Shown one piece after another: positions 7,272 to 50,452 of a DNA stretch of 64,000 nt; positions within the stretch are counted from its first letter, which is position 1; the number at the start of each line of letters is the position of its first letter. The notes below the pieces were generated by a model. It was given only the letters and a program-made list of their open reading frames with translations. It was not told the DNA's origin and searched no databases. The DNA comes from Styela clava (taxonomy: Eukaryota). The translations under genes and the position numbers were made by a program. Location: assembly GCF_964204865.1 (NCBI RefSeq), contig NC_135252.1, positions 20,398,001 through 20,462,000 on the forward strand. Reading direction: 5' to 3'.

Positions 7272-7501
7272 TTTTTATATTATAATCATAAAACTCAGTA
7301 GCACAAATTATTACAAGTCTTCTAAAAAGAAATTGAATTGCCTTCCTCATTAAATCTGACTACCTAAAGGCAGTTTTTGCGGGTAATATTTGGAACGGGA
7401 TTCTTGTTGCGTATACTATTCAAAATAATATTTATCAAAAAATTTTGCTATTAAGACCAATAGGTAATATTTTCAGAAGTGTCGTATAATGTGATAAACT
7501 T

Positions 7502-7760
7502 ATTATTTTAATCTAAAACAGTGAGAAACGCAGATGAAATGAACAATTTTGTAACCAAAATATATGGCATCTTAGTAATACACTGATCAAATCATATTTT
7601 ATGAAAAGCACTAATGAAAAGAAGCAAGCTGAATTGAAACAAACGGAACTACTTTAAACAGCCAAATCGTGATTGTCTCCTTGATCAATTGACACAAAGA
7701 TTCATTATCGAAGAAGAAAATAAAAAGAAGAAAAAGATTCAAAAATCATTTGCAACATAG
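7502..7760 (+). pseudogene. decayed exon-like segment downstream of the last lid repeat (also ~50700-50941)
   Basis: Coding-like purine-rich text (DEMNNFVTKIYGIL..., EEENKKKKKIQKSFAT*) with internal stops; AATAAA follows at ~7850 and ~51030. Confidence 0.35.
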
Positions 7761-9259
7761 CCGATGATGTGTTGCCCGGTGACGCCCCCACCGAAACATA
7801 TGCCCCCTGTGTTTATATAACTTAGAATCTGAGTTTTATTGTGGCTTTAAATAAAGATTTTTTCTGTTTTTTTTTTTTTAATTTTTATTATGTATATTCA
7901 TGCTTGCATTATACCCCCAAATTTTTAAAACCCATAATTAAAATTGAGAATTTCGTAATCGTACAATTTACAGCAAATTAGGATGTATAGATTTAGAATG
8001 ACTTTGTTTCAGGTAATTAGTCGTACCTAATTTTTGAATTTTGTAAATTTCTTGTTTTTGTTTGAATACCCCATGCTTTTTTAGATTATTAACATTAAAT
8101 TAGTTTGCGTAATCTGGTTACTAAAAAAGTTAGGAGGGTTTTATCGTAATATTGAAGTTGAAGTAACCTAGCTTAGAATAGAACAACAATGTCTTGATAT
8201 CATCAATAAACATATGAAAATGTACCCTGTTTTGTATTATTGTGTTGATATTTTTTAGTTGGGAAAATGAAAGAATTTCTGTAGTTGCGTTGGCGAAATA
8301 TTCTTGAAAAGAAATCAGCATAGAATTGTCTTGACAATTTCTAAGAAACTTCAAATGAACGGAACGATAGATAATAAAGGAGATAACTTTAAGTGAAGCT
8401 ACACAGACGAGTTATTTATATTTTTTCTCATTTTTTATATGGAATATTTGTTGACTCACTAGCAAAATCTGGAGTTAAGGATATGCCTCAGTGAATGCCG
8501 GACACAGCAAAGTTTGAGGATTTCATGTACGAACATTGGAATTTTGACATCTTTTCATTTAAAAATATTACAATCAATTTATTTTTTTTTTAATCTGATA
8601 TTCAATCGTGGGTTAGCGCAATATTCCAATAACAAATTACAGAAGTTCAACAATTAAAATTTATTTTTTGTTCGTTTTCACAAAACATACTTTTAAAGAT
8701 GGATTATCACGCAAAAAATTTTGTGGCGAATTTGATTTTATATATTTTTTTAAAATGTTTGGCATTTACCGTTAACATAAAGTGGACTTCGTTTGCGAGA
8801 ATTGAATTTTCAAAAGACAACCCTGCCAAAATCGAACGCAAATTAGTATGTTCTCTTGACGACGAAGTAGTGAGAACTCGTCGGCGTAATTTTGCGTTGA
8901 GTCAAGGATATTTTTTGCGTTTTGTGTATTTATTTTGAAGCGTATGCAAATTCTATTGCATTTGAAAAACGCTTCTGTGGTTTATATACATACCAATATC
9001 TTCAAATAATATCATTGCATCATAATTAATTACAGTGAATTCAACTAATCGAGGTCAAGATGTACTCGAGTTCTGTGCTGGATCTTTTGCTGCAACATAT
9101 TTTCCAACGAAATAATGCATACCAGACAATTCATTGTCTTGAATCATCTAGATTTTATAATTTATGTGGGTTTATTCTAATTCTGTGACTAGTTTTTTGT
9201 TATATTGCCGGTATACATACATTGAATTAGCATAATTCGTATGTTAAAAATTACTATTT

Positions 9260-9470
9260 AAATATTTATTTTCCTGTTTCTACTGACATCAAATGTAAAT
9301 ATCACACTTTGCATGGAACTTAAAAAAAAATTAAAATTATCTTTAGATTACTGAGGATGAAATAGAGCAACAAAGATCGGGATTAATGGAGTTTGTAGAA
9401 AGATTGAGAAATCGAATAAAAGAAGAACAACAAGTATAGTTTTTATATTATAATCCTAAACCTCAGTCGC
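9260..9470 (+). pseudogene. orphan duplicate of the last B exon with flanks (copy-2 version at ~52437-52760 is interrupted)
   Basis: Copy of ~7090-7300 (ITEDEIEQQRSGLMEFVERLRNRIKEEQQV*) with no partner A exon. Confidence 0.7.
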
Positions 9471-22224: not shown

Positions 22225-23283
22225 AAATAGAATATTTCAGGTTTATGTCAGAAGATAGAAATTGTGGGCAAAGCTTTCTATTTATCCGTATAGTTTATTC
22301 AGGTAGGACTTATAAATAATTGACGTTATAAAGACTTGGACTACTAATTCAATAGGAACGATGGCAAAGTGCTATGATTAAACAAAGGTTAAAGCTCCAA
22401 CAATTTACAAAGGACAGAAAGGGACAGTCGTCGAATGGTAAAGAGCGCTTGGTTAAGAGTCTAAAAATACGATATGACATAAAGTCTACATTGGATATAT
22501 CAATATTAAACTTATCTTTTATAAACCAGTAACCAGGGTCAAAAATTCTTACAAATATGCGTTGGATTCAATAAAACAAGCTGCCATACTGATACAATAT
22601 GCATCCAAAAGGGGAGTCTCGATTCGAATTCGAGTATCGTATTCCTTATTAGTTCATGCATTTCATACGAACACCAGGATATACATTTCTAAAGCGTTAC
22701 TTCAATACGCTTCGCTACACAAAAGCACAACCCACGACGGCAAAGTAAATGTTCACAAACGATACGACTTTGAGCAAGTAGTTATTGTTATAGTTATTGT
22801 TGTTCCTCTTTTTACTAGGTAATTAGGCTAGGCTATGATTTGTTGGCTATGCCTTTACCATGCACGACGTAGTTACGTGAATTCGTGGATTTCCCGACCG
22901 CATTTGGTAAGATTTTTTAGTCACAGCTTTTATGTACTAAGAGAACAACAAGCCACCAGACAAGCACATGCCAATTTCTATTTTCAGCATCGATGGCATA
23001 ACTTAGTGGTGCAGTATATTGAACTAAATGACTAACAACTTAAGTTCTGGATTTTTCGTAGTTTGCCCATCCCTGTTTTACAACAACATGTCAAATATGT
23101 GATAATAACTTGTAATTCAGCGTTTTGAAACTTCAATAAAATATTGTTCATATTGATAATTAATTAAAATATACATGCAGTTGGAAATTTAGCAAATTTA
23201 TTTTACAGATACATACAGTTGGAAATTTTAAGACAAGGCAACGAGACAAGAATTAAATAGGAAATCGATCCGACCAAAAGAAT

Positions 23284-26200
23284 ATGGCCAATAGGAAGCC
23301 AAAATGCCAAGAACAAGACAACCCAGCAATATACCCTGAGTGCGATCATGTACAAGATTGCCCAGGAGATGATGAGGTACGTTTGACTGTACGCTCTACA
23401 TTTGTCGCTTCAAAAATATGTGTACCTATATGGAGGTAACTAATTTTGTTCGCTTACTTTACATCAAGTTGTGTGAGGGGACTGAAACCTATGGGCAGGG
23501 GGATATTCTCTTGGCTAACACAGACATTCCTCGATCTTGTAAAGAAACCAAAATAAGGAAAATCGGAATGAAATTATGGCCTATCCCAAACGTGGTACAC
23601 ACACTACGGGTGTATCTTATATTTTACGTTGCCTACTTTAGCATTGAGCAAGGCCTTGATATCTCACTTTCAAAAAACTAGCTTCTCGGGTTTGTGAATG
23701 AATATTTTCGATTTTCGTCTGTGTTATGATAGCAACAGGATATATCTAGTTTAAACGGCGTTTGATGGCAGGCCCAGACCGACCAGTTAATCGACCAGTT
23801 AAACGACTAGTAAATTTAAACGACCAGTGTACGACTATAGTTGAATATACCGGCGACTAGTGTCACTTGTATCACATTTCTATAAACAATTTTTTGAAAC
23901 CATATCGAATAAAAATTACCGAAAGTTACGAGCAAAATATACGAACACTTTCATATTTATTTTGGTGGTGTTTTATACTTTGGGTTGAAACACTGTGTTT
24001 TAAAAAGAATTATGTTCAAGCCGCATCTTTGGGAATGGCATATCTATTTTGTAAAATCTCACTGAGCCGGTGGGCCAGTATTGGCCAAAGATATTCGTTT
24101 TCAGGATGTTACATTTTTATACGCTCTTCTTCAGTCAGTAGTTCCTTTTTTTCACCAAGCGGTAAATATACACCGTAAATACACAATGTAAACAAATCGA
24201 GAGAAAAGCGCTCGAAAAACGATCTTGTTATTGAGCTGCAACAGCTTAGTTTAATATTATTTTTCAAGCAGATAATATATATTATTAACTAGTTTTAGAA
24301 GATATGTCTCAAGTTCATTCAATGTTAAAAACCTTTTTGATTTATTTATATTTAAGTTAAGCTTCCAATTGGAAACTATGCATTCATCTAGTACTCACTG
24401 AATTCTATGACCGACCGAGTCAATTCAATATGACAGAGCCGAGGTCAAGCTCATCAAACATTTGCACTTGTCTTGTTCAATACAAAGGTTAAACCCCAAA
24501 ACAATACGTTAATAACAGTAGCTCCCAACATATATGGCGGGGTATACAGAAAATTGTATGGGAGAAAGGCGCTGTATAAAACAATTATTTAAATGATAAA
24601 ATTGCAGGCTGTGGACAGGGAAATTACAATGAAAGAAGAACACAAAATAAACAAGAATTACGGGATTTTCAAGAATACATTCGTTCCGTTCAAGAGCATG
24701 AAATATTTCAGCAACATGAAAGCTATTTAACACCTGATGACAAAAGAGAAATTATAAATAAATGTTGTGATGTGATCCAATTTCTCACTGAAATATCAGT
24801 AAGTTATCAACATTATTAATATTGTACAGGTTTATTTAACTTTGACTTATGTTCAGAGCAAATCTGTATACCTCCTTTGAAAAGATTGGATTCATTCTTT
24901 CATTTGTACAGTATATTAACATATAGATTATAGATTATTTACAAATACTGCTTTTTATATCTTAATTACTAACTATCTATCCGTTGCATTCTGTCAGAGT
25001 TATACTAATAGTATTGGATATATAGCATTTTTAGATAAAGATCGTGGTGAATATACGAAACACTCGCTAATTTTATTTTCAATATCTTTAAATTCAATTT
25101 TACATGAAACATTCTTTACTTATAAAAGCTAATAATTATCTCATAGAATATCTTATATTTTCAGGAAAATTTCAACATTAAGCAATTACAGGCCAAAAGA
25201 CTCGGATTTGAAGACTTTGTTTGTAGCGTACTACACAGATTACAACACAGAGCTCAGGTAACAATATTTAAATTTTAACAATTTGTTATAGATTGTATAA
25301 CTCCTTGTTTATTTAGCCAACAAAAACCCATGTTTTGCCAAGCGTAGAAAAATGTGAGTTAAGATTAAACTTTAGTCATATTAACTAATTTTTTACAGTA
25401 ATTCTGAAAGAATGGTATTTACACAAGCGTGATTGCGCGGATCGTACTGTTGACTTACCTTTAGATCTTATGTAATTAATCTAATGCCATAAAAATGAAT
25501 ATGGGACTATATTTAATTACCGTTTATCTACTGGGCATCATTCACAAAAAGGATTCAGACATAAGTTTAAATAGTTTATTATTTTAAATTACGAATATTG
25601 AGAAAAAAAATTATTGTCTAAATATAACAGCTTGTAGGTGACAGAGAACAAGAAAATAAGCGCAATGAAGCTATTCAAAGTTTTCAGAAGTACATTCGTT
25701 CAGTTCAAACTTACGAAATATTTAAGATATTAAAATCGTTATTGACACCTGATAACAAAGATGAGGTCAACAAAAGATGTCACGAATTAGACAAAATGCT
25801 CAGTGACAACCTGGTAGAGTATTTATTACTTGGATACAATTTTAAATCAAACAGATATACTGTTTTTACGTATCGAACGTATCGAATTTTGGAAATAAAT
25901 TAGGTCACAATTATTTGCTTTCTTTCATCGTTATTATATCCTTAGTACAGTCAATCAAAAAACATGATTATATATGTTCATGTTGTATAATTCAAGTATA
26001 ATAAAACTAGTTTACATACAGAGAGAGCTCGATATTAAAGATATTGAGTCCGAAAGACGAGAACTCGATGATTTTATCAAGATTCTCATGCACAGTTTAC
26101 AAAGTAAAGATCAGGTAATATATTCAAAAAAACGTACATTGACATTATGTCTAACGAAAAAAAATATAAATCAAACATTTTTCTGGGTTATTGATATGCA

Positions 26201-38200: not shown

Positions 38201-41200
38201 TAGCTTTTTTCCTAGTCATTCTGACTTGAAATTTACTCGGAAAATGTGCCTCGGTAACTGTCTGGCTTCTGTTGGTTTTGATATTCTAGTCGCTCGTAGA
38301 TGAGACAGCCCGTGCTTAGGGTAACTTCCCGCGAAAGTAAGAAAGACGGCGTCCTCCTAATGCTTCTATAACAAAAGAAGGGTTTTAAGTTTTTGTCACT
38401 ACTAAACATAAGAGTTGAATATTTTTCACGGTAATACGATATACAAGTAATAATTTTATCTCCAGGGAAACCTTCATTTCAAACAAATCGAAGACAAAAG
38501 AGCTGAATTTGAAAGTTTCATTCAAAGTATTGTGACTAAACTGCAAAGCAAAGCTCAGGTAATCATTTCAATACGATTTACATCATGTTAGATTACAGCG
38601 TTTTCCAACCTTTTTTGGTCGCGGACTATTTTCTCACCGACGAAAACCTTTGCGGACTCAACGTGCTTTTATTGCAACCGGACTCTGTGTGAAGAAGTAA
38701 TCAAACCAAACACAACAGAATTTTAACGAATTTCAAATTCGGAAATTCGCCGCAATCAGGCGTTTGTTAAAAGAGCCGACTTTTTTTAGTGTATAAATGG
38801 CCTTTTCTGTCGCACAATATTCAATTCATGACAACGACGACAATTTAAAATGTCTCTCTATTTTTAATTTAATTGTGTTCGTGGTCACTCGCGGTTGCGT
38901 CGACTTGTGATAAGATGAACGCATTACTTTTTTAAAATGCGACGCCAATCTGTGAACATAATAATGTGAGAATATATTGCCCGATTATAATTAGTTTTGA
39001 TACATATTTTTTTGCGATCTTGCAAATTTGTTGTCGCCGTTAGAAAAATCCTACTATCTGCTATAAATTTACAGAAAGTACAACTTGATTTGTAACTTAT
39101 TAAAAATATAATTAAAGTATATCAGTAGATCGAGAAAAAAAAATTTCATCACATTGCTTTAATATTAATTTAATTGTGATCATTTTATTTTAATCTGCGG
39201 TTGTGTTGACGAAATAAAAGCAACACTACTCAAAAATTATCATGACAATCCGTGAGCACAAAAATGCGTGGTGAAGTGCCCGAATATATTTTGTTTTGAT
39301 TCGCATTTTTGTGAATTCGACAAATCTGAGCTATTCGTACAACACTTATGGCGCTCCAGTACTGTACGTACGTACCAATGTGAAGGCAGTAAAGCAAAGA
39401 ATCCTAAGGGAAAATGCTCTGATACGTATACTACGGTAGCACTCGAAATTTTGCGATTTGCAATGTCTAAAAAGCGTTTTTAATCGGTCGCGGACCATCA
39501 TAAAACAAAACTTATGGTGTTCTCCGTTTTATTTTTTAGTATTTTGTTTTGCCGCTTTTCAATTTAGAATATTTAGGTTGCCACCATTGACACCTGCCAA
39601 ATTTTCAAATAGTAAATTGCTATTCTAATAGTTGAATATTCGAGTAAATGCGTAGCCCTATACTCAGTATCCAGTAATTATTGGCTCGATTAATGTTATG
39701 TGAATAAACTTGCTTTTTATGTTTTATGTAAATTCTAACGTAAATCGTAACTTGGCTGATGGTTAAGTTTCGCAAAAACGTTTGGGGCCGCAGTGAATTT
39801 CTGGCTTGTTGCGGACTCATTCAAACGCTCCGCGGACTCAGTTGAGACCCCGGATTCGGGTTGAGAAACAATGTGTTAGCATGATTCAATATCGATTTAT
39901 ATATCTAAGTTTTGTTTATACTATAATAATTATATCTTATAAAAAATATATTAAAAAAAATGTATTTCCTAAAAGATTATTTTTAAAGTTCATGGTCAAT
40001 TACCTCATAATAAGATTTGCTCGGATTTTCTAGATGTGAAACCATGCATATATACTTTTTAAATTCATCTAATCGTTCATTCATTCTTGTTCTAATTTAT
40101 CTCTTTTTGCTTCCTCCCATGCGTGTGATCCACTCACACAAATATAGGAGTTGTCTAACTGTTATGTTTCACAAAATAATATTCCATTTACGAGAAAACC
40201 AGCTGAATATTATTGTTATTCACTTTTTATTTAGATGGCTGCAGATAAGATAAAACAAGAGAGAAGAAAAAAGTGGGATGAAGCAAACAGAAACCTTCGG
40301 AAAACGTTAGATTCAGTTCGTACGCAAATAACGAACAGACATCTCGGCAAAGATTTTTCTCAATACATCGAAAACATAAAACGTACTTGTAACCAAGTCG
40401 AAGATTGGCTTCAAAAGAGTCAAGTAAGCGTGACAATTGTAAATTATATCTGCCATGAAACATTATGTTCTTTCAAATACATAGTGACTCTCTTCCTATC
40501 AGTGGGTGGTCACCTAGTGCTTTGTTTAAAAAGCAAAGTTTTCTCATTAAATAATACACTTCAGTGAGCGCCATTTAACTTTGCACAAGAAAGCAGTCTC
40601 TTTTTCTTCTAAGTGAGTGAGCAAAACCGTGCTTTGGGCAAATTTTCAAACAAAGGTAAATTTTGTATTAAACTGCTAAAATTAAATTTAAAGATTAGAA
40701 CACTTGGCGGTGATTGAATCAGCACATTTAAAACGTTTTGTTGCTTCAGGGTAAGTATACACAATTACAACATTTTTCAGAAAACCATCACTGTAGAAGA
40801 ACTAGAATCAAAAGTTATTGAAGTGGAGGCGACTCTTAAAAACTTTTGGAGTGGATTAAAACAAGAGATACAGGTGAATGTCTAGGAGGGTGGTTGGAGA
40901 CGGTTCAATGTTTTATGCAACAATGCTTTGCATCCACGCAGATTCTTGCAGTACTAGTGCTTGCTATCCTATCAGCATGTACAACTAACAATAGTGATTC
41001 CAGATCTAAAGATCCACCATTTGTCTTTTTCAAGCAATAAAAATGACATCTAAGTCTTTTTCGATATATCAAATTACTTATTTTAGGCATCTCAATCGTT
41101 AACCGAATCTTTTTACTCTTTAGCAATTCTTACTTTAATCGAACATCCATTTTTGGTTATGGCATTACTCACTACCCATTACTCATCCCACTCGTTATCC

Positions 41201-44200
41201 GCGTTACGTTATACGCTTTATTATCCTCATTAAGATTCCAGAACAAGTGTTAAAAACACTCAAAAATTCAGTTGTTTTCTGATGTACAAACCAGGTCATC
41301 GAAGCAGATAAGCAACAGCAAGCAAATAAAGAAAGAAAACTGACTGAAACTCGTCATAATCTCATGGGGTATCTAGATTCAATTCGTCAGATGTGCGAAT
41401 CAGAACAAATTGCTGAAACTGAATATGCAGATAAACTAAGTGGCCTATGCAATGAAACTGAAGAATGGCTCAAATCTGAAGTGAGTCTCAGCATTGCTTA
41501 AATTAAGACGATTTGTTCATGCCAATTTCTCATCATAAAATACTCTTATAGTTGGATACATGGTTTACATATGCATCGTTTTTCCCAATTCTTGTTGTAG
41601 TGTTTTTTGTTATGTAGTTATCACTGAAGTATGTGTTGTGAGTGTTGGAAATAAATCTTTTTACCCAATTAAAAGGTGATTACATTTTGAATGGGAAACT
41701 TTCTCTGTGACGAGATATTTCGCTGAAAAATTTACCGTTTTATTTAATTAGAGGAGAACACTTTGTATTCTGCGTTGCCATACCGCCCTTGCAATGCTTG
41801 CACCCTCAGATCTTTTTAACAAATTTTTATCAGGCCTTGCAGTGGAGTAGAGTGTACCGAGGTCCGACATATGTGTCAGCATGTTTGAACATTGCTCTCT
41901 CGTTTACTTCTAATTTTTTTTAAGCAGAATCTTTAGTTCTGTCGTTTTCAAGATTTTGAATGTGATAAAACGATTGCTAACTGTGACTACTTTAACAGGG
42001 GATATCAGCAGAATCGATCCAAACTAAGCACGAGGAGTTGCAAGCTACTGTGCAAGGAATCAAACAAAGTATAAGCAAAATGAAACAGGTTTGTCAATAC
42101 TCTTATTTGAAGATATATTATACGACTTGGAACAATTCTTCATCTCTGACATATTATATTATTGTATGTACATTTTCATGGATAAATAAGTTGATTGTGG
42201 CTGGATGGGTTTTATGCGCATATCAGTGATCGGAGTCGTTTTTCGTTTCTATTTGTATCGGACGTCTTCTGGATATCCAAGACCCCTCAACATACTTTGA
42301 CATATACTTTTTTTATTGTTGATTGTTGTTCGATTTTTTATGCTATTCTCAATTATTGTTAGGCCTAATAACGTATTTTGCTGTTCAGTAACCAGTATTT
42401 GTTTTCCTTCAGCCCTAAAGCCATTTTTACTTTTTTGTAATCTTTATTCACAAAGTGTATTTATGTATGGTGGAAAAATAAATTCCTGATTAGTGGCATA
42501 TATTTCCAAAGGAAAAAGAAGCAGAAGAAAATCTTCGACAAAAAGCATTCGACAATATGTGGAATTATATCGACGAAGTTCAAACAAAGATCGCAACTGA
42601 TGTGGAAAACGATGAGTTTACGAGACCGCATATCAATAGGATTACAGAAAGCTGCGAAATAGTATTGGAGTGGGTTAAAAAAAATTATGTGAGTTCGAAA
42701 TTTATACAATATGATATATAACACCCCTTAAAATAAAATGGTGCTTGGGTTAGACTTTGGTCACCTTTATCAAATACTCACGGTAAGTAATCTAAACAAA
42801 ATATGAGAGATTGGGAAGCCACTCATATTTATTTTGTGTTAGCTTACTAAAACAAAATGGCGAGTTCCAACAAAAGCAAGTATAATAATTTTAGGAGTAG
42901 CAGGTAGCCACTTACTATTGTTTAGGGGAATCAAGTCATTGACTGTACTTGAGCCATCTTTTAAGGACTTACGTTTACTCGACCTGAGTCATCGAAATTA
43001 ATGGATTGAAAGTTCAAAGTGCCCTTATATCCACTCATTTTATTATTGTTTATTCATCTACCTATGACTTGGAATCGACCTGTGACTTGATTTGCGACTT
43101 ATGATTTGGCTGCGGCTGTGACCGTGTATTGCGCTGTGACACGTGCTTGAATTCTAACATTTGCTGGAACTTATACTTAAGTCGAAACTCAGGTGACTCG
43201 GAACTCGATTTGACTTTCGACTCGGGGTTGAGGACCTGACTCAACACTTGGAAACTACGGATATACTGATTGTTAATAGATGTTGGTGGATGCAACTCTT
43301 TAACGGAGAATCTATGGTTTTTAAAAATAAAAACACCTCAGTAGAAGTAATGCGGAAATTTTTGCGGATATTTCTATTTTAGTATTTATTATGACATTAT
43401 TTGCTTAGAGGCTAAAATTTTTTTCAAATTTTATGCTATTAAACTCTATAACTTGTTGTATACTTTCCAAGGATCGAATTACATTCGATACCATTATATC
43501 AGAGCAGCGTAATCTACGAACAACGATTGAGGATATTTATGATAAAATGCAAGCAAGCAAAACTGAGGTAAGATAAAACTATGGGAATTGCATTCGAAAT
43601 TTTAATATAGAATTTACGTGCAACGAAGCTTGCAACTTTGGACGTATGTCGTTACATATAAATTAGAATCACTCGCATATAATGCATAAAAATACCCTAT
43701 TTGCACAAAAAATGAAGTTTACTCATTCTGGTTCTGAGTTTTCGTTTTTACATGTTTCACATTAATATATAGCACATGGGATGTGAGGCTGAATATGGGG
43801 TTTCAATTGAAAAATTTGAAAAGGGGATGCACTAGGTGCTAATACCAGAAAGAAAATTTCTGATTCGCAAAGCGGGAATGATTCAATATTACTTTTTCAA
43901 AGCACCTTTTTGATCTACCCCTTCATTTATTTTTCAGGCAGAAGAAATATTTCGACAGCAAGCCCTAACTGCTGTACATCATTACATTGACGATGTTTGT
44001 AAAAGTCTGGAAGCTGAAAGAGAAACGGACAAAACAATCGTCCAGTGCATTGATACAATATACAAGCATTGCACGAATGTATTCAAATGGACTAATGAAA
44101 ATTACGTAAGTCAGTCGCGCAAGGAAATTCGACTCACGGTGACCAAGTGAACTCGTCGATTAAGTACACCGTATTTTACACCGATTCGTAGTAATCGACA

Positions 44201-47200
44201 TCCTAGAGCTTTCTATGTAGGCGTACTTTTTAGCTTCATCAAATTCTAAGTTTGGGCTATGTAACAGAAAGTGTACTGGATTTCGTTGGTTCAAATTGAA
44301 CGCATTATCACTGTAATTATTCCGTCCCATTCAAAACCTACAAAAAGATATGATTCAGTTGACAAATTACTTTATTTATAATATCGATATTAAATTGTTT
44401 TCAGCATCAAATCACTGGCGGAAGAATTTTATCAGAATTTGATAACTTACAGAAAAATGTCAATGATATTTTTAATGTGTTACAAGCCAGAAAAATAGAG
44501 GTGAGATTTTCCTATCGATGGTATTCGAATGTCTTGCACCATACCTGCATATTTACGAGAGCAGTAATTTTGTGCGAGAACCTTAATTTCCGAATATAGG
44601 TTTAAAGATTTATGACCAGAAGTAATTCAATTTCATGGTACGTTTTGGGTCAAGATAGGTGTAAAACTGAGAAAGTACTTACCGTAGAGCCGAGTAAAGA
44701 CAGTCGAATTTATACCGAAATATTATATTATTTGAAAAATGTACTCAAACTAAATTGGTCGCAGAGTAGGAAAACAACATTCTGACCATATTTTATCTAC
44801 TAAAATAATTGCATATCTTTTTTCTAAAGTAAAGTATTTATCAGCAATTATTATTTTATCAATAACTATGCCCTTAACTATAAGTTGAATGTGACTCTTC
44901 GGAGCAAAACTCTAAATCAAATATTGCTAAGGTTCTTTTTGAAGTATTTTTAGTTATATATCTATCAACTATTCATTTTATGTAAAAACTCAATGAAGTT
45001 ATATTTCCTACAAGGCCGAAGCTGAGCGTGAACGACAGCGGGCAGAAACGATTAGAAAGCGCGCGGAAGTAATCAACAATCTCCGAGCCCACATTTCCGA
45101 GGTCAGATCGAGAGTTGTATTCAAAAAGTTCAAGAACAGATTGACTGAAGAAGATTTGAGATTGATATTTAGTCAATGTAACATTGCAGAAAGACATATC
45201 GAGGTGAATATCGCGTTGCCTATGTTGGTATTAAAGGTTAAAATCTTAATTGAAATGCCATATCAACATACTAACCCAGTGTGTAACAAATTGGCTAAAA
45301 ATGTCAAAACTGTATTAGTCTATTAACATATTAGCTTATGTCACATTCTAAGGTTTTGAGAAAATTGCATTTTTGTGGTAGTTAAATAAAAACCTACCTT
45401 AAATAATTTACCTAAAATAAGTTACCTAAAATAAAAACTAAAAGGTCCAGGTTTGTAACCCCAAAATGGTCTATAAATACATAAATTCAGATAATTTCTA
45501 AAAAATATGACTTGAGCTCCTTTGATTCTACTCGATTGGTGTTGTAAATAATTTAATTGTTGTTCAGGAAAATTCAGATACGATCCAACTGGAAGTCCAA
45601 TATTTGGATATAAGCAAAATGACTGAAGATGTGTACAAAAAGTTAAAAAGAATTGACACGGTGGGGTGAATATTTTAAAATGTATTCCCTTTTGAAGCTT
45701 GCTACATTTGGACTTAGTTTCGTCAATTTTACTTTTCGTAGACCTGTCTGTTACTTTTAATATTATAACGTTTTTTCTTCCCGTTGTATATATGATAAAA
45801 TATAGACAATATTATTTAAATTATTATTTTTTCAATCATTACTGATTATGAATATTAAATGTTTTTAGTTAGAAAAGGCTGAGGTGGCAAGGAGGCAAGC
45901 CGAAGAGCAAAGAAAGAAAGATGATATGTCTCAAAAAGTGAAGAGTTACATCGACCGTGTCCAACGTCTTACTGTGTTTGAGCCTCTCACGTCTAGATTG
46001 ACAAAAAACGATGAAGCTCGAATTCAATCTGAATGCATCAAAGCAAATCAGTTTTTAATTGCGGTACACGAACCTATTTGCTCAGAATCTTAAAATATCT
46101 AAAAAGGGTTTAAGCGTAATGTTGTGACGTCCAATATGGCCACATACGTTGGGACAAGTCATACAAAATTAGATTCTTTACTGGAATATTTTCAAGTCAT
46201 TGTAGAAAATACCGCTAGTGTCAGTATTTGGCCTAAAGTTAGTTTTTCACCGTGTGGTTTTCATCACCAATATTCTGTCAAATATAATAAAACGTTTATT
46301 CATCTAATAGGAAAACTTGACTTCTGCTGAAATTGAAAAAAAGTGTAGAGAACTAGAGGAATATGTTCAAATTATTTACAAGAAGTCGAAAACATGGGAA
46401 GAGGTATTTGATCTAGTTGTTGCTTGTTTTTTTTTTCCAAAATCAGTTCATGTGTTATATGTAATGTATATTATATCTTCAATCAAAAAAATGAATTTTT
46501 TTGAAATGCAAATGAGTTTAATATTCACGACTTATTAACCTGTAGAGTAGAGTTTTGTTTTCTCAAAATTTATACATATTCGCTACTTTCGAAATTTTTC
46601 TATGATTTTGTAATTTCGCTTTTAATGAGGATATATATGCGAATCCAATCGGACATAGAATCTTGTTTTATGAGAATGGATTTGACGTGATTCGTTCGAA
46701 TTTGATGAATTACAGAAAACTCTCATGATATTTTTAATGCGTTACGGGCCAGAAAAATAGAGGCGAGATTTTACTATCTACGGTATTTGAATGTCTTGCA
46801 CCATACCTGTAAATTCATTGGAGCAGTACTTATGTGGGAGAACTTTATTTCCGAATATATGTTTAAATATTTATTACTGGGTGTAATTTAATTTCTTGGT
46901 ACGTTCTGGGTCAAGATAGGTGTAATTGTGAGGAAGTTGTTACTGTAGAGCAGAGTAAAGTCAGTCAAATTATACCGAAATATTATCTGATTGGGAAAAT
47001 GCACCCAAGCTAAATTGGTCGCAGAGTAGGGAAACAACATTCTGGCCATACTTAATCTACTAAAATAATTGCATACCTTTTTTTTAAAGTAAAGTATTTA
47101 TCACCAATTATTATTTTCCAAATAACTATGCCATTAACTAATAATTGAATGTTACTTTTCTCAGCAAAACTCCAAATTAAATGTAGCTGAGGTTCTTACT

Positions 47201-50200
47201 AAATTATTCCTAGCTATATTTATATCAACTAGCCATTTTTAAAAAACAATGAAATTTAATTTCGGGAAAGGTCGAAGCTGAGCGTGAACGAGAGCGGGCA
47301 GAAACGATTAGAAAACGCGCGGAAGTAATCAACAATCTTCGAGCATACATTTCTGATGTCAAATCGCTGGTTGTATTCAAACAGTTCAAGAACAGATTGA
47401 CTGAAGAAGATTTTAGATTGATATTTAGTCAATGTAACATCGCAGAAAGACATATCAGGGTGAATATCGCGTTATTGTTCCATCTTATACTTCACTATGA
47501 CTTTGCACTATACGAGCAGCTGTTACTTTGTAGTTAGAGGACGTGACTATGTTGGTATTAAAGGTTGAAATCTTTATTGAAATGCCATATCAACATACTA
47601 ACCCAGTGTGTAATAAATTGGCTAAAAAATATCAAAACTGTATTAGTCTATTAACATATTAGCTTATGTCACATTCTAAGGTATTGAGAAAATCGCATTT
47701 TTGTGATAGTTAAATAAAAACCTACCTTAACTAATTTACCTAAAATAAGTTACCTAAAATAAAAACTAAAAGGTCCAGGTTTGTAACCCCAAAATGGTTT
47801 ATAAATACATAAATCAGACCATTTCTAAAAAATATGACTTGAGCTCCTTTGTTTCTACTTGATTGGTGTTGTAAATTATTTAATTGTTTTTTTTTTGTTA
47901 TTTTTGTTCAGGAAAATTCAGATACGATCCAACTGGAAGTCCAATATTTGGATATACGCAAAATGACTGAACATGTGTACAAAAAGTTGGAAAGAATTGA
48001 CACGGTGGGGTGATTATTCTAAAATGTAATTCCTTTTGAAGCTTGCTACATTTGTACTTAGTTTCGTCAATTTTACTTTTCGTAGACCTGTCTGTTACTT
48101 TTAATATTATAACTTTTTTTCTTCTCGTTGTATATATGATAAAATATAGACAATATTATTTAAATTATTATTTTTTCAATCATTACTGATTATGAATATT
48201 AAATGTTTTTAGTTAGAAAAGGCTGAGGTGGCAAGGAGGCAAGCTGAAGAGCGAATAAAGAAAGCTGAAATGTCTCAAAAACTGAAGAATTACATCGACC
48301 GTGTCCAACGTCTTACTGTGTTTGAGCCTCTCACGTCTAGATTGACAAAACACGATGAGGATCGAATTCAATCTGAATGCATCAAAGCAAATCAGTTTTT
48401 AATTGCGGTACACAAACCTATTTGCTCAGAATCTTAAAATATCAAAAAAGGGTTTAAGCGTAATGTTGTGACGTCCAATATGGCCACATACGTTCGGAAG
48501 TCATACAAAATTAGATTCTTAACTGGAATATTTTTAAGTCATTGTAGAAAATACCGCTATTGTCAGTATTTGGCCTAAAGTTAGTTTTTCACCGTGTGGT
48601 TTTTATCACCAATATTCTGTCAAATATAATAAAACGTTTATTCACCTAATAGGAAAACTTGACTTCTGCTGAAATTGAAAAAAAGTGTAGAGAACTAGAG
48701 GAATATGTTCAAATTATTTACAAGAAGTTGGAAACAAGGGAGGAGGTATTTGATCTAGTTGTTGCTTGTTTATTCCAAAATTAGTTCATGTGTTATATGT
48801 AATGTATATTATATCTTCGATCAAAAAAATGAATTTTTTTGAAATTCAATTGAGTTTATTATTCACGACTTTTTAACCTGTAGAGTAGATCTTTTGTTTT
48901 CTCAAAATTTATACATATTCGCTACTTTCCAAATTTTTCTATAATTTCGTAATTTTGCTATTAATGAGAATATATCTGCGAATCCAATCGGACATAGAAT
49001 CTTGTTTTATGGGAATGGATTTGACGTGATTGTTCGCTAAAATTTAGTGATTGAGATGTTAGCTTGTTCGTCCGTTTTTTGTGTAAATCCTCCAACATAT
49101 AGCTGTGTCCTTCACAGTATTGTTCAAACCTTTTCAAGTAAAGCGGTGTTACTGATCTACTGATTCTAAAAATAAGGCTATACGTAAAATTCTTAGTGCT
49201 CCAGTCTTTACATAATAACTCTTCTATCAGTAATCTTTCGGTATTTGGTTGATGGCTCTGGATCTCGCTTTGAGCAGTTTAACATAAAAGTATTATTTTA
49301 GAAGTTTCTTTTTAAAATTTCCAGATAGCAATCAAATGCAAAGATGATTTAACAGAATGGAACAACGCTGAGGAGAGCTTATCTAAGTGCATAAATTACT
49401 GGAAACAGTTAGTTATTCACAACAGAGGAAAAGATAAAATAACGGATAAGTATTTCAACAAAATAGTTGAGATGTACACGGATGCTGAGAATTGGTTTCT
49501 GGTTTCCTATGTATGTATAGGACACGTTCTTTTTTAATATAAAATAATATTAACATTAATATTTTATTATCAATGTTAAAGTTGCAAAGCAACTGTTCTA
49601 GCTTTTATGAATTTTAAACAAAAATAGACGCAGTTTTTTTATTCTTATTTTAGAAAAATATTTCGCAGAAAGAACTTAGAGATAAACGTGAGGACTTAGA
49701 AACAGTTGCTTCTAAAATTTTAAAGAGTATGCAAGATGAGAAACAGGTGACAACTTAATTATAATAATTCTGTGAATATGACACCTTAGTCTTTATACTA
49801 TATATAATTCGTTTCGTGTATTAGGTCCTTCAGCACATCATTTTATGGTCAACGTCTGTTTATGACCGAGTTTTACAGATACTCGTGAAAGTTCGTTTCA
49901 ATTTCAAAGATCAAATTAACAAAAGAAAATATTTAAAATTAGACATGTGACAGCATGTCTCTTGTAACATTTTAATTCAATCAGAATAAGAAAGAAATAT
50001 TTTGATATTGATATTTTTTTTTCATCGAAATGAGTCGTTTTTTATATTGTTCGTAATCACAGAAACGTGATCGAAAAATAGTCAGAGAAGCCGATGAATG
50101 TCGAATGTTTATCAGTCGTGTCAGATCCTTTGCTGTTTTTGGAGAACAACGAAACAAACTCACGTCAGAGGATATAAAGTCAATAACAAGAAAATGTAAT

Positions 50201-50452
50201 GAATTAAAAGGATGGCTTAGTTCATACCCAGTGAGAAATTTTTCTAATTCTTAGGTTAAATATTTCTCTTCATATATTTATTTTTCTGTTTCTACTGACA
50301 TCAATTTTAAATATCACACTTTGCATGAAACTTAAAAAAAGAAATAAAATTATTTTTAGATTACTGAGGATGAAATAGAGAAACAAAGAACGGAATTAAT
50401 AGAGTTTGTAGAAAGATTGAGAAACCGAATAAAAAAAGAACAACAAGTATAG
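23284..50452 (+). CDS. giant protein of 22 tandem HSP70 C-terminal lid (SBD-alpha)-like helical repeats, ~2070 aa, 45 coding exons (copy 2, apparently complete)
   Basis: Leader 23284-23376 (MANRKPKCQEQDNPAIYPECDHVQDCPGDDE). A/B exon pairs, all lengths multiples of 3 and stop-free: 24619-24798/25165-25257; 25631-25813/26022-26114; 26397-26585/26903-26995; 27366-27557/27984-28067; 28360-28545/28895-28987; 29906-30085/30511-30603; 30914-31102/31459-31551; 31758-31946/33962-34054; 34677-34868/35050-35142; 35365-35553/36162-36254; 36591-36788/37314-37406; 37916-38086/38466-38558; 40235-40423/40781-40873; 41295-41480/41999-42088; 42512-42688/43472-43567; 43938-44105/44405-44500; 45015-45203/45568-45660; 45869-46063/46311-46403; 47271-47459/47912-48004; 48213-48407/48653-48745; 49325-49510/49654-49746; 50063-50230/50360-50446, then GTA TAG. 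The first A-exon acceptor and the 3' end are the least certain parts. Confidence 0.85.
23418..23616 (-). mobile_element. MITE, inverted copy of the 26639 family
   Basis: Reverse-complement similarity to 26639-26852 (tggtacacacactacggg terminus; ORF fragments KIG/EIKLWP..VHTLR). Confidence 0.65.
26639..26852. mobile_element. MITE with long imperfect TIRs
   Basis: cccgtagtgtgtgtacca...tggtacatacacttctggg; flanking direct repeat caaaattg. Confidence 0.7.
29081..29378 (+). mobile_element. Helentron-associated / DINE-1-like element in an intron
   Basis: Near-identical to 16973-17260. Confidence 0.75.
32155..33762. mobile_element. 1.6 kb non-autonomous hAT-like element
   Basis: TIR taggcttgcacg...cgtgcaaggcta; TSD atactaag/atactgag; aattacgg subterminal arrays. 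Absent from the paralogous intron 31103-31458. Confidence 0.85.
35818..36050. mobile_element. palindromic MITE (possibly two nested related MITEs)
   Basis: Inner ~38-bp inverted repeat ccggtacgtagtatgtgtaccaggtcagggttaggcca / tggcctaaccctgacctggtacacatactacgttccgg; outer agtatgtgaa/ttcacatact. Confidence 0.75.
38596..39873. mobile_element. older hAT-type non-autonomous element
   Basis: Ends cagcgttttccaacc...ggttgagaaacaatg; gcggact subterminal repeats; TSD degraded. Confidence 0.7.
42924..43275. repeat. degenerate DNA-transposon remnant with gact(t/c)g repeats
   Basis: Arrays of gacttg/gactcg; no clear TSD. Confidence 0.4.
46697..49030 (+). repeat. internal ~2.3 kb tandem duplication of a two-module block (source ~44435-46690; copy-1 equivalent ~3577-5910)
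   Basis: Exons and introns of modules 19-20 are close copies of modules 17-18; the block starts with a headless half of exon B16. Confidence 0.9.

What the first reader, a model, noticed from the sequence alone, without database searches (positions are those of the whole stretch)
23284..50452. A ~2070-aa protein built almost entirely from 22 tandem HSP70-lid-like helical domains
Seen: spliced A+B exons give ~93-aa modules. Module 14 reads VIEADKQQQANKERKLTETRHNLMGYLDSIRQMCESEQIAETEYADKLSGLCNETEEWLKSE-GISAESIQTKHEELQATVQGIKQSI; module 21 ends GKDKITDKYFNKIVEMYTDAENWFLVSY-KNISQKELRDKREDLETVASKILKSM. Established: the HSP70 lid (helices B-E) reads approximately [91 protein letters not shown]. The landmarks N/F-x-x-Y, (I/L)S-x-D-D-K, KC, W/F-L and K-R-x-E-L/F-E recur at the same spacing. 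No nucleotide-binding domain, SBD-beta, EEVD, signal peptide or TM segment is visible. Inference: a stand-alone, amplified lid-domain polymer in the cytosol, acting as a rod or scaffold, a holdase, a sponge for lid-binding factors, or a decoy for pathogen proteins that target HSP70. I know of no characterised protein with this architecture. It is invisible in the ORF track because the exons are only 84-198 bp.
Basis: partly seen in the sequence, partly recalled or inferred. Interest (0 to 1): 0.9.

Follow-up and report, generated by a model that had tools for sequence, protein, structure and literature searches.

The report
Giant protein of 22 HSP70 lids
A sea-squirt (Styela clava) gene really does encode a ~2070-residue protein made almost only of 22 tandem copies of the helical "lid" of the HSP70 chaperone, without the ATPase or substrate-binding parts; it belongs to a species-specific cluster of about eight such genes whose function is unknown.

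Summary
On the + strand, 23284-50452 holds a first coding exon plus 22 two-exon modules (A about 60 aa, B about 31 aa). All junctions are phase 0 with GT/GC-AG. The window is Styela clava, C3:20398001-20462000.

RefSeq already models 41 of the 45 exons as XP_077966879.1, "uncharacterized protein". Spliced contigs from four probable RNA runs confirm the ten 5' junctions. They place an in-frame TAA 30 nt upstream of the ATG, so no ATPase domain can be fused in frame. No NBD-like sequence lies anywhere in the window.

The modules are true HSP70 lid homologues:
- The A-exon profile hits HSP70 C-terminal domains in the PDB (E 3.7e-5).
- A full-module HMM aligns end to end with residues 523-609 of S. 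clava's own HSP70 (E 3.7e-8).
- An AlphaFold model (pLDDT 88) matches Ssa1, DnaK and HSPA1 lids best (Z 11-11.5). It shows three-helix bundles joined by continuous 55-60-residue helices, like a spectrin rod.

At least 140 such modules lie in about eight genes within 300 kb. Two neighbours carry an HSP70 NBD but no beta-sandwich. dN/dS is 0.42-0.46. No relatives were found outside S. clava.

Function is inferred only. Caveat: this copy lacks 1 nt in exon 2 relative to the transcripts. The scan had already noted a sister gene (s1-819787).

The parts
23209..23376 (+). First coding exon. Alternative acceptors at 23209 and 23219, in-frame TAA at 23254-56, ATG at 23284. Encodes a 31-aa hydrophilic N-terminal peptide, MANRKPKC...GDDE.
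   Evidence: Spliced contigs in X1, X2 and X4 join 23376 to 24608 (GT..AG). Sequence read. The same N-terminus is present in RefSeq paralogues P0002, P0023, P0008 and P0026.
24608..25257 (+). Module 1: A exon 24608-24798, B exon 25165-25257. This assembly lacks one base after 24652 relative to the transcripts, which frameshifts the ATG frame.
   Evidence: Joints 24798>25165 are seen in 3 runs, and contigs insert G or A after 24652. Frames were checked. The older RefSeq model P0026 reads through intact.
25631..26114 (+). Module 2: A 25631-25813, B 26022-26114. The A exon is skipped in one contig.
   Evidence: One search shows joints 25257>25631 (X2) and 25257>26022 (X1). Searches also apply.
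26406..26995 (+). Module 3: A 26406-26582, B 26903-26995
   Evidence: Exact P0001 mapping. Joints 26114>26406 and 26582>26903.
27366..28067 (+). Module 4: A 27366-27557, B 27984-28067 (GC donor after 28067)
   Evidence: joints 26995>27366 and 27557>27984.
28360..28987 (+). Module 5: A 28360-28545 (GC donor), B 28895-28987
   Evidence: Contigs support the junction 28545|28895, which differs by 4 nt from RefSeq's 28549|28899.
29906..30603 (+). Module 6: A 29906-30085, B 30511-30603
30914..31551 (+). Module 7: A 30914-31102, B 31459-31551
31758..34054 (+). Module 8: A 31758-31946 (GC donor), 2015-nt intron, B 33962-34054
34677..35142 (+). Module 9: A 34677-34868, B 35050-35142
35365..36254 (+). 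Module 10: A 35365-35553, B 36162-36254
36591..37406 (+). Module 11: A 36591-36788, B 37314-37406
37916..38558 (+). Module 12: A 37916-38086, B 38466-38558
40235..40873 (+). Module 13: A 40235-40423, B 40781-40873
41295..42088 (+).
42512..43567 (+). Module 15: A 42512-42688, B 43472-43567
43938..44500 (+). Module 16 (divergent): A 43938-44105, B 44405-44500
45015..45660 (+). Module 17: A 45015-45203, B 45568-45660
45869..46403 (+). Module 18: A 45869-46063, B 46311-46403
47271..48004 (+). Module 19: A 47271-47459, B 47912-48004. Recent tandem duplicate of module 17.
   Evidence: Exons are 91-96% and introns 93-97% identical to modules 17/18.
48213..48745 (+). Module 20: A 48213-48407, B 48653-48745. 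Duplicate of module 18.
49325..49746 (+). Module 21 (divergent; the only module without the conserved Cys): A 49325-49510, B 49654-49746
50063..50452 (+). Module 22 and the end of the ORF: A 50063-50230, B 50360-50446, then GTA TAG (stop 50450-52). RefSeq instead uses GT at 50447 as a donor.
224..9433 (+). 3' end of the upstream paralogue (G4). A exons at 2770-2937, 4152-4334, 5115-5282 and 6879-7043. B exons at 224-310, 3191-3277, 5534-5620, 6478-6564 and 7179-7259, plus an extra B-like exon at 9347-9433. Not part of this gene; near-identical to 43-53 kb.

Best explanation
SHOWN. This is a transcribed, spliced Styela clava gene (RefSeq LOC120343202). It encodes a soluble ~2070-aa protein of about 235 kDa with a very high charge content. 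The protein has a 31-aa N-terminal peptide followed by 22 tandem copies of the HSP70 SBD-alpha lid (helices B to E). It has no ATPase domain, no beta-sandwich substrate pocket and no EEVD tail.

Each lid is encoded by two symmetrical phase-0 exons. The A|B boundary sits where intron-bearing canonical HSP70 genes have an intron, after WLDxNQ. The array therefore grew by tandem duplication of a two-exon unit taken from the locally expanded HSP70 cluster on chromosome C3.

The gene is an NBD-less, 5'-truncated derivative of neighbouring genes that read NBD, then lids, with no SBD-beta. It is under moderate purifying selection.

INFERRED mechanism. The lids no longer act as lids. The last helix of each module runs straight into helix B of the next, so the chain forms a spectrin-like rod of three-helix bundles, roughly 100 nm long. 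The rod most likely serves as a cytosolic structural or scaffolding element, possibly working with the co-clustered NBD-lid ATPases.

My odds: identity and architecture about 0.9; 'rod/scaffold' as the actual function about 0.4. The confidence figure given for this explanation (0.6) is for the whole statement taken together.
For: Architecture:
- Repeats are on one strand only.
- P0001 (XP_077966879.1) maps exactly as 41 exons with canonical sites.
- Spliced contigs in 4 runs from 2 studies confirm the ten 5' junctions. The first coding exon has an in-frame TAA upstream of the ATG.
- Complete RefSeq paralogues P0002 and P0023 start with the same MAN(T/R)KPKC exon and have no NBD.
- No NBD is found in the window by tblastn at E<=1.
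- No TM segment: the maximum 19-residue hydropathy is 0.67.

Homology to the lid:
- The A-exon profile against the PDB gives HSP70 C-terminal domains in 9 of the top 10 hits (2p32 E 3.7e-5, HSPA2 2e-4).
- In 1.84 billion proteins the same profile finds, apart from two weak repeat-protein hits (a Bartonella YadA-like adhesin and an unexamined protein), only S. clava paralogues and canonical HSP70 lid fragments.
- The full-module HMM aligns positions 4-91 with residues 523-609 of S. clava's EEVD-ended HSP70, E 3.7e-8 at Z=177635.
- Canonical HSP70 ORFs in the same genome are hit at about 1e-5.

Fold:
- The AF2 model of paralogue P0004 (83% identical to the matching part of P0001) has pLDDT 87.9 and helices of 55-60 aa spanning module borders.
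- The best structural matches are Ssa1 SBD-alpha (Z 11.5, 93 of 101 residues), DnaK (Z 11.4) and HSPA1B C-terminal domain (Z 11.0; Foldseek TM 0.75, rmsd 2.9).

Selection:
- dN/dS is 0.42 against G8 and 0.46 against G2 (Fisher p 3e-18 and 3e-8). There are no stops in the 38 and 27 matched exons.

Origin:
- NBD exons lie directly upstream of the lid arrays of G3 and G8.
- Our module 1 corresponds to P0027 residues ~502-566.
Against: - Pfam PF00012 does not reach threshold on any single exon or on P0001.
- The B exon alone gives no HSP70 hit.
- Three-helix bundles of unrelated proteins score Z about 10 too, so the fold alone is not discriminating.
- This assembly's copy, and its identical duplicate 81,255 bp downstream, lack one base after 24652. 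Read literally, the ATG frame stops in exon 2. RefSeq accordingly starts its model at an intronic ATG.
- Transcript contigs are shallow (word depth 2-7), and some derive from a paralogue or a divergent allele (12-15 mismatches in exon 2).
- Only the 5' 6 kb was tested with reads.
- Recent internal duplicates show exons no better conserved than introns, with pN/pS 0.58.
- Nothing tested here bears on function. The inter-module geometry has low pTM (0.46).
Confidence: 0.6

Rival explanations
1. Multivalent modulator of the HSP70 system. The 22 lids keep a binding surface for HSP70 NBDs, as BAG or Hsp110 helical bundles do, or for lid-less SBD-beta, or for lid-binding co-factors. The protein would then cluster, sequester or regulate HSP70s, or the neighbouring NBD-lid ATPases.
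For: The gene lies inside the tandem HSP70 expansion of S. clava. Wei et al. 2020 (PMC7540406) report that the clustered Hsp70 genes are induced at 12 and 2 deg C. Sister genes fuse the same lid array to an HSP70 NBD. Purifying selection is present.
Against: The conserved positions are those that also match canonical lids. I read them as the hydrophobic core of the bundle, from my knowledge of lid structures. The N-terminal half of helix B, which contacts SBD-beta and the NBD in HSP70, is a variable charged stretch here. There is no EEVD. No binding evidence of any kind was obtained here.
Confidence: 0.2
2. Little or no function. The gene would be a by-product of runaway segmental and exon duplication in an unstable cluster, and this copy would be a transcribed pseudogene because of the exon-2 frameshift.
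For: A base is missing after 24652 relative to the transcripts, and is also missing in the identical duplicate. Transcript depth is low. Recent duplicates have exon identity no higher than intron identity. The family is confined to one species.
Against: About 6.2 kb of coding sequence in 45 exons stays open in a 30% GC genome, although modules have diverged to 10-26% identity. dN/dS is 0.42-0.46, significantly below 1. Intact full-length paralogue models exist (P0002, P0023, P0026). A single-base indel in an A-rich run is a common assembly error.
Confidence: 0.15
3. The modules are generic coiled-coil, spectrin or BAG-type repeats, and the resemblance to the HSP70 lid is superficial.
For: Older RefSeq names for paralogues were 'CEP290-like', 'CEP112-like' and 'myosin heavy chain'. 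The predicted rod resembles spectrin in layout. Unrelated three-helix bundles reach Z about 10.
Against: Profile searches return HSP70 lids almost exclusively, over the full module length and in register. There are no Pfam spectrin or BAG hits. Plectin spectrin repeats have Foldseek probability 0.18 against 1.00 for HSP70 lids. Paralogues grade into complete HSP70s: P0019 is a full HSP70 plus about 10 lids.
Confidence: 0.02
4. The lid array is really the 3' part of a longer HSP70 gene whose ATPase exons lie upstream.
For: This is the layout in neighbours G3 and G8 and in models P0027 and P0025. The transcript contigs carry 64-71 further 5' letters from an unidentified upstream exon.
Against: An in-frame TAA lies at 23254-56, inside the transcribed exon upstream of the ATG. 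The 64-kb window contains no NBD-like sequence, and the nearest is more than 60 kb away. The paralogues' NBD-containing upstream regions hold no copy of this first exon.
Confidence: 0.03

Closest known systems
HSP70 SBD-alpha lid (C-terminal helical subdomain; e.g. human HSPA1B 3LOF, yeast Ssa1 5Z8Q, C. elegans 2P32)
   Same: Each module is homologous to it over helices B-E. The landmarks are in register (N-L-E-x-Y, K-[IL]-[ST]-x-x-D-K, K-C, [WF]-L, K-x-x-E-[LF]-E). It has the same three-helix-bundle fold in the model and the same intron position after WLDxNQ.
   Different: In HSP70 there is one lid per protein, attached to an NBD and SBD-beta and followed by a disordered EEVD tail. Here there are 22 in tandem with none of those parts, 10-26% identity between modules, and scores below Pfam PF00012 thresholds.
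S. clava NBD-lid(n) and HSP70-lid(n) paralogues (XP_039268234.1 = P0027, 2395 aa; XP_039268066.1 = P0025; XP_077967405.1 = P0019)
   Same: Same lid modules, same chromosome region and same exon structure. Many exons are 87-100% identical to those of G8 and G2.
   Different: They start with an HSP70 ATPase domain. P0019 also has the SBD-beta. This gene replaces all of that with a 31-aa exon.
Spectrin-repeat rods (spectrin, plectin, dystrophin)
   Same: The predicted layout is the same: tandem three-helix bundles of about 90-106 aa in which the last helix of one repeat continues into the first helix of the next. The comparison itself rests on established knowledge of spectrin.
   Different: There is no sequence relationship (no PF00435 hit). 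Plectin repeats give a poor structural match. The origin is independent.
BAG5 (five tandem BAG three-helix bundles that bind the HSP70 NBD); comparison from my own knowledge, not tested
   Same: A multi-copy array of three-helix bundles linked to the HSP70 system.
   Different: BAG domains are not lid homologues. No BAG hit was found by Pfam or among the top 50 structural matches.
Hsp110/Grp170 extended lids (Sse1 2QXL; Pfam HYOU1_C)
   Same: A divergent HSP70-family helical lid. Sse1 matches at Z 10.2. ESM Atlas look-alikes carry HYOU1_C or HSP70 at weak scores of 0.86-0.87.
   Different: They have a single lid per protein, always together with an NBD and SBD-beta.

Membership tests
HSP70 SBD-alpha lid domain (homology) | Significant, in-register sequence similarity to the lid of bona fide HSP70s | tested here: met
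   A-exon profile against the PDB: 2p32 E 3.7e-5, 5fpn 2e-4, 9 of the top 10 are HSP70. Full-module HMM against S. clava HSP70 residues 523-609: E 3.7e-8, HMM positions 4-91 of ~95.
HSP70 SBD-alpha lid domain (homology) | Helix B-C-D/E three-helix-bundle fold | tested here: met
   AF2 model with pLDDT 87.9. Ssa1 SBD-alpha Z 11.5, DnaK Z 11.4, 3LOF Z 11.0 with TM 0.75. This is a predicted structure, not a solved one, and it is of a paralogue 83% identical.
HSP70 SBD-alpha lid domain (homology) | Detection by Pfam PF00012 above the gathering score | tested here: not met
   No PF00012 hit on 10 single exons at E<=10, nor on P0001, P0002, P0004 or P0023 at E<=0.01.
HSP70 SBD-alpha lid domain (homology) | Shared gene structure: intron after WLDxNQ | tested here: met
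   Canonical HSP70 exon fragments P0014-P0017 and P0021 end in ...WLDxNQ followed by V (GT read-through). The module A|B boundary aligns to the same place.
HSP70 chaperone (functional family) | Actin-like nucleotide-binding domain | tested here: not met
   tblastn with the P0018 NBD against the window finds nothing at E<=1. The own-genome search finds no NBD exon inside the window. An in-frame stop lies upstream of the ATG.
HSP70 chaperone (functional family) | SBD-beta substrate pocket and C-terminal EEVD | tested here: not met
   P0001 consists of lid modules only and ends ...RIKKEQQ. No PF00012 match.
Spectrin repeat | Sequence membership (PF00435) | tested here: not met
   No hit. Plectin repeats have Foldseek probability 0.18 and rmsd 33.
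Spectrin repeat | Bundles linked by a continuous helix (architecture only) | tested here: met
   Helices 49-103, 137-196 and 233-291 of the model each span a module border. The relative orientation of modules is uncertain (pTM 0.46).
BAG domain | Sequence or structural match to BAG three-helix bundles | tested here: not met
   No Pfam BAG hit, and none among the 50 best VIA rows.

The most novel reading that the evidence does not exclude
The lid-only rods and the neighbouring NBD-lid(n) proteins, which have an HSP70 ATPase but no substrate pocket, form a new HSP70-derived machine. In it, ATP-dependent docking of the first lid on the NBD moves or assembles ~100-nm helical rods. The NBD-less rods such as this one co-assemble as passive subunits. 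This would be a chaperone domain re-used as a cytoskeleton-like or condensate-scaffolding system, perhaps tied to the cold response reported for the clustered Hsp70 genes.
Probability: 0.1. Interest if true: 0.85.

Novelty: new variant of a known kind. Interest (0 to 1): 0.6.

Why it matters
The HSP70 lid is normally a single accessory subdomain of one of the best-studied proteins in biology. Here it has been freed from the chaperone and amplified. There are 22 copies in this protein and at least 140 in a 300-kb cluster. The cluster spans a graded series of architectures: full HSP70 plus lids, NBD plus lids without a substrate pocket, and lids alone.

That gives three things:
1. A natural experiment on what the lid can do on its own, such as its stability, self-association, client contacts and NBD contacts.
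2. A clear case of a rod-like repeat protein arising by exon-pair duplication from a globular chaperone, convergent with spectrin.
3. A correction to annotation. Pfam does not see these domains. Older RefSeq names (CEP290-like, CEP112-like, myosin heavy chain) are misleading. The published count of 42 S. clava Hsp70 genes does not mention these architectures.

The value is limited. The family appears confined to one ascidian species and its function is unknown.

Tried and rejected
- Pfam on ten single exons at E<=10 gave no HSP70 hit, only chance matches.
- Pfam on P0001, P0002, P0003, P0004, P0006, P0007 and P0023 found nothing relevant.
- The B-exon-only profile (31 positions) against the PDB gave only GCN4-type chance hits. 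It is too short to be informative.
- Complex prediction with S. clava HSP70 residues 1-512 and one and a half to two lid modules of P0004 gave no verdict. It is reported here only and is not evidence either way.
- The ESM Atlas gave only weak look-alikes (0.86-0.88) carrying HYOU1_C or HSP70. This is a lead, not a test.
- Literature searches for repeated or tandem lids found nothing. The S. clava genome paper and an HSP70cA preprint do not mention the architecture.
- The species of the multi-lid HSP70 P0009 (MetaClust) could not be identified. Only one further candidate appeared, P0033.
It was rerun with window coordinates (between).
- My own spliced model was never sent to a search tool. Searches used single exons by reference or the database protein P0001.
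- Reads were laid only on 23200-29199 (one call allowed). Junctions from 29 kb onward rest on the RefSeq model and on splice-site sequence.


Full report
WHAT IS THERE

The window is AT-rich animal DNA (GC 0.28-0.40). It is Styela clava, G000:C3:20398001-20462000.

A profile seeded with one A exon and iterated on the six-frame translation finds 24 A-type exons. All are on the + strand. Twenty lie between 24631 and 50224 and four between 2770 and 7043. A B-exon profile finds the interleaved B exons.

A search of 1.84 billion representative proteins with the A-exon alignment (A1) returned 22 proteins. The best is P0001, which is XP_077966879.1, "uncharacterized protein LOC120343202 [Styela clava]", 1898 aa. 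P0001 maps letter for letter onto the window as 41 exons from 25974 to 50446.

After correcting four boundaries that my greedy mapper had shifted, every junction is phase 0. Acceptors are AG. Donors are GT, or GC in three cases: after 28067, 28545 and 31946. All exon lengths are multiples of three, 84-99 nt for B and 168-198 nt for A. Modules can therefore be gained, lost or skipped without breaking the frame.

THE 5' END AND TRANSCRIPTION

RefSeq starts P0001 at an ATG inside the intron before exon B2. Contigs of four probable RNA runs, from two studies, were laid on 23200-29199. They show spliced joints at:
- 23376>24608
- 24798>25165
- 25257>25631, or 25257>26022, which skips exon A2
- 26114>26406
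- 26582>26903
- 26995>27366
- 27557>27984
- 28067>28360
- 28545>28895

All have GT/GC..AG ends once the stated ambiguity is allowed for.

The first coding exon begins at alternative acceptors 23209 and 23219. It holds an in-frame TAA at 23254-56 and the ATG at 23284. The contigs carry 64-71 further 5' letters from an unidentified upstream exon. The TAA means that nothing upstream can be fused in frame.

The encoded N-terminus is MANRKPKC...GDDE. It is hydrophilic and recurs in RefSeq paralogues P0002, P0023, P0008 and P0026.

Caveat: the contigs carry one extra base (G or A) after 24652. Without it, as in this assembly and in the copy 81,255 bp downstream (identical over a 501-bp sample), the ATG frame stops in exon 2. 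The older RefSeq model P0026 reads straight through...EHKINEELRDFQEYIRSVQ. This is either a single-base assembly error in an A-rich run or a real lesion in this copy. I could not decide, because only one reads call was allowed.

Transcript depth is low (2-7). Exon 2 of the longest contigs differs at 12-15 places, so some contigs come from a paralogue or a divergent allele.

No reads were laid beyond 29.2 kb. There the model rests on RefSeq and on splice-site sequence.

IS THE MODULE AN HSP70 LID?

Negative results:
- Pfam does not see it on single exons or on whole proteins.
- The 31-position B profile alone finds nothing.

Positive results:
- The A-exon profile against all PDB sequences gives HSP70 C-terminal domains in 9 of the 10 best rows. 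These include C. elegans 2p32 (E 3.7e-5), HSPA2 (2e-4) and HSPA1A (2.6e-3). They align to K-[IL]-S-x-x-D-K-x-K-I-x-D-K-C-x-E-V-x-x-W-L.
- In the 1.84-billion-protein library, the hits outside S. clava are a Bartonella YadA-like adhesin (P0011), an unexamined repeat-type protein (P0020) and short ORFs. Every short ORF I read (seven of eight) is a canonical HSP70 lid exon.
- I cut 20 whole modules out of the database protein P0001 in a script and built an HMM. It aligns positions 4-91 of ~95 with residues 523-609 of S. clava's own intronless, EEVD-ended HSP70 (locus L001). E is 3.7e-8 for a database of PDB size. A complete lid fragment, P0013, scores 4.4e-11. One module therefore equals one lid, from mid helix B to helix E.
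- Five of those canonical fragments end ...WLDxNQ followed by V, which is a GT donor read through. Intron-bearing HSP70 genes thus have an intron exactly where the modules have their A|B boundary.
- An AlphaFold2 model of P0004, a 334-aa RefSeq fragment of a paralogue, has mean pLDDT 87.9. P0004 is 83% identical to the matching part of P0001 and covers modules 15-18.
- By Foldseek, the only high-probability, low-rmsd matches are HSP70 lids: 3LOF (TM 0.75, rmsd 2.9 over 82) and 5Z8Q (TM 0.71, rmsd 2.2 over 87). Plectin spectrin repeats get probability 0.18.
- In the VIA second look, the top rows are Ssa1 SBD-alpha (Z 11.5, 93 of 101 residues), DnaK (Z 11.4) and HSPA1B (Z 11.0). About 20 of the best 30 rows are Hsp70-family.
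- Unrelated three-helix bundles also reach Z about 10. The fold supports the sequence evidence but does not replace it.

SHAPE AND PROPERTIES

In the model, helices 49-103, 137-196 and 233-291 each run from the end of one module into helix B of the next. This is the spectrin type of linkage. The relative orientation of modules is uncertain (pTM 0.46).

P0001 without its intronic start is 1882 aa and 225 kDa, with pI 7.2. It is 37% K+R+D+E, 0.5% Pro and 1.5% Gly. It has 27 Cys, and the KC cysteine is kept in 21 of 22 modules. No segment is hydrophobic enough for a membrane span; the maximum 19-residue hydropathy is 0.67. There is no EEVD.

GENOMIC AND EVOLUTIONARY CONTEXT

The A1 profile finds at least 150 A exons in the genome. 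About 140 lie in C3:20.27-20.57 Mb, in roughly eight genes:

| Gene | Modules found | Note |
|---|---|---|
| G1 | 5 | |
| G2 | 19 | |
| G3 | 25 | |
| G4 | 14 | |
| G5 | 22 | this gene |
| G6 | 14 | |
| G7 | 19 | |
| G8 | 22 | minus strand |

The window's first 9.4 kb is the tail of G4.

Many hits recur with identical scores at offsets of 81,255 bp and 81,050 bp. This indicates very recent segmental duplications or gene conversion.

NBD exons of HSP70 type lie directly upstream of G3 and G8, on the same strand as their lid arrays. Those regions hold no copy of our first exon.

Related protein models:
- P0027 (2395 aa, old RefSeq model): NBD 8-394 plus lids, with no SBD-beta.
- P0025: NBD plus about 9 lids.
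- P0019 (1644 aa): a complete HSP70 (Pfam 2-593) followed by about 10 more lids.

Our module 1 corresponds to P0027 residues ~502-566. This gene is therefore a 5'-truncated, NBD-less derivative that acquired a new first exon. P0002 and P0023 (1320 and 1324 aa) have the same architecture and are probably G4 and G6.

Between paralogues, dN/dS is 0.42 (G8) and 0.46 (G2). Fisher p values are 3e-18 and 3e-8. No stop occurs in the 38 and 27 matched exons. The recent internal duplicate (modules 17/18 against 19/20) shows no excess exon conservation, with pN/pS 0.58. Constraint is real but moderate.

Outside S. clava, no lid-array relative turned up in 1.84 billion representatives. A MetaClust protein of unknown origin, P0009, carries an SBD-beta plus six canonical-looking lids. 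One JGI protein, P0033, may be similar. Lid duplication has therefore happened elsewhere on a small scale.

WHAT IT PROBABLY DOES

Shown: an NBD-less, pocket-less, tail-less polymer of lid domains that is transcribed, spliced and under purifying selection.

Inferred: the conserved positions are those shared with canonical lids. I take them to be the hydrophobic core of the three-helix bundle. The part of helix B that touches SBD-beta or the NBD in HSP70 is a variable charged linker here. Selection therefore seems to keep the fold and the rod, not a lid function.

My best reading is a spectrin-like cytosolic rod or scaffold of roughly 100 nm (odds about 0.4). It may be associated with the NBD-lid ATPases next door.

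The rival readings are a multivalent HSP70-system modulator (0.2) and a near-functionless by-product or pseudogene copy (0.15).

A single complex prediction with HSP70 1-512 gave no verdict and is not used.

Wei et al. 2020 (PMC7540406) report 42 Hsp70 genes in S. clava, 32 of them on one chromosome. The clustered ones are induced at 12 and 2 deg C. The paper does not mention lid arrays. Whether these genes share that response is unknown.

KNOWN OR NEW

The gene is in RefSeq, but unnamed. Older paralogue models are misnamed CEP290-like, CEP112-like and myosin heavy chain. I found no paper describing tandem lid arrays. The domain is known and the architecture is not, so I rate it a new variant of a known kind.

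The scan had already noted the sister gene G3 (s1-819787). My genome search agrees with its 25 modules and adds that G3 has NBD exons upstream.

LIMITS

- My own spliced model was not sent to any search tool. Exons were searched by reference, and database proteins were used for whole-module work.

Noticed in passing
window 224-9433 (+): This is the 3' end of the upstream lid-array paralogue (G4). It has four A and six B exons, several identical in score to modules 18-22 of the main gene. It also has an extra B-like exon at 9347-9433, whose counterpart at 52524-52565 in this gene is degenerate and runs into a stop.
   Followed up: partly
G000:C3:20270000-20572000: This 300-kb cluster holds at least 140 lid modules in about eight giant genes, seven on + and one on -. 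Many exon hits recur with identical scores at offsets of 81,255 and 81,050 bp, so recent segmental duplication or gene conversion makes this gene a mosaic of its neighbours. A 501-bp sample at +81,255 bp is 100% identical.
   Followed up: partly
G000:C3:20326486-20336040 (+) and 20576933-20585733 (-); L004, L008: HSP70 NBD exons lie directly upstream of lid arrays G3 and G8. The old RefSeq model P0027 (2395 aa) reads NBD plus lids without any SBD-beta. P0025 reads NBD plus about 9 lids. P0019 is a complete HSP70 with about 10 extra lids.
   Followed up: partly
G000:C3:19.2-22.75 Mb: Dozens of intron-bearing HSP70 NBD exons, several with stops, are scattered over 3.5 Mb of this chromosome. This is probably the tandem Hsp70 expansion reported by Wei et al. 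2020. Canonical intronless HSP70 genes sit on C17 (three copies near 10.53 Mb) and C8.
   Followed up: no
window 24652-24653: There is a one-base deficit relative to transcript contigs (G or A inserted). It frameshifts the ATG frame of this copy, and the same is true of the duplicate copy at +81,255 bp.
   Followed up: partly
window 25257>26022: One transcript contig (X1) skips exon A2 in frame. RefSeq model P0008 of a paralogue also skips many exons. Module-level alternative splicing seems possible.
   Followed up: no
window 23400-23600, 26600-27000, 29000-29200: These intronic stretches have very high summed word depth in the RNA-like runs (hundreds at 26600-27000, 6,000-32,000 at the other two), with many loose ends. 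They are probably high-copy transposable elements or SINE-like repeats.
   Followed up: no
window 18942-20731 (+): Long ORF fragments (103 and 222 aa) resemble retrotransposon polyprotein remnants. They lie between the ParB-like gene and this gene.
   Followed up: no
window 14403-15020: Another first-stage note (s1-822946) describes a Tox-ParB-like gene here. It lies between G4 and this gene and is part of the 81-kb duplicated unit. Not examined.
   Followed up: no
P0009 (MetaClust UPI0006131887), P0033 (JGI): P0009 is a partial HSP70 of unknown organism with an SBD-beta followed by six canonical-looking lids. P0033, a JGI HSP70-family protein, covers 82% of that lid region and was not read further. 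These would be small-scale lid duplication outside Styela.
   Followed up: partly
window 28067, 28545, 31946: Three GC-AG introns occur in one gene. At 28545|28895 the transcript contigs support a junction 4 nt away from the one RefSeq uses, giving NPEDLD instead of NPANLD.
   Followed up: yes
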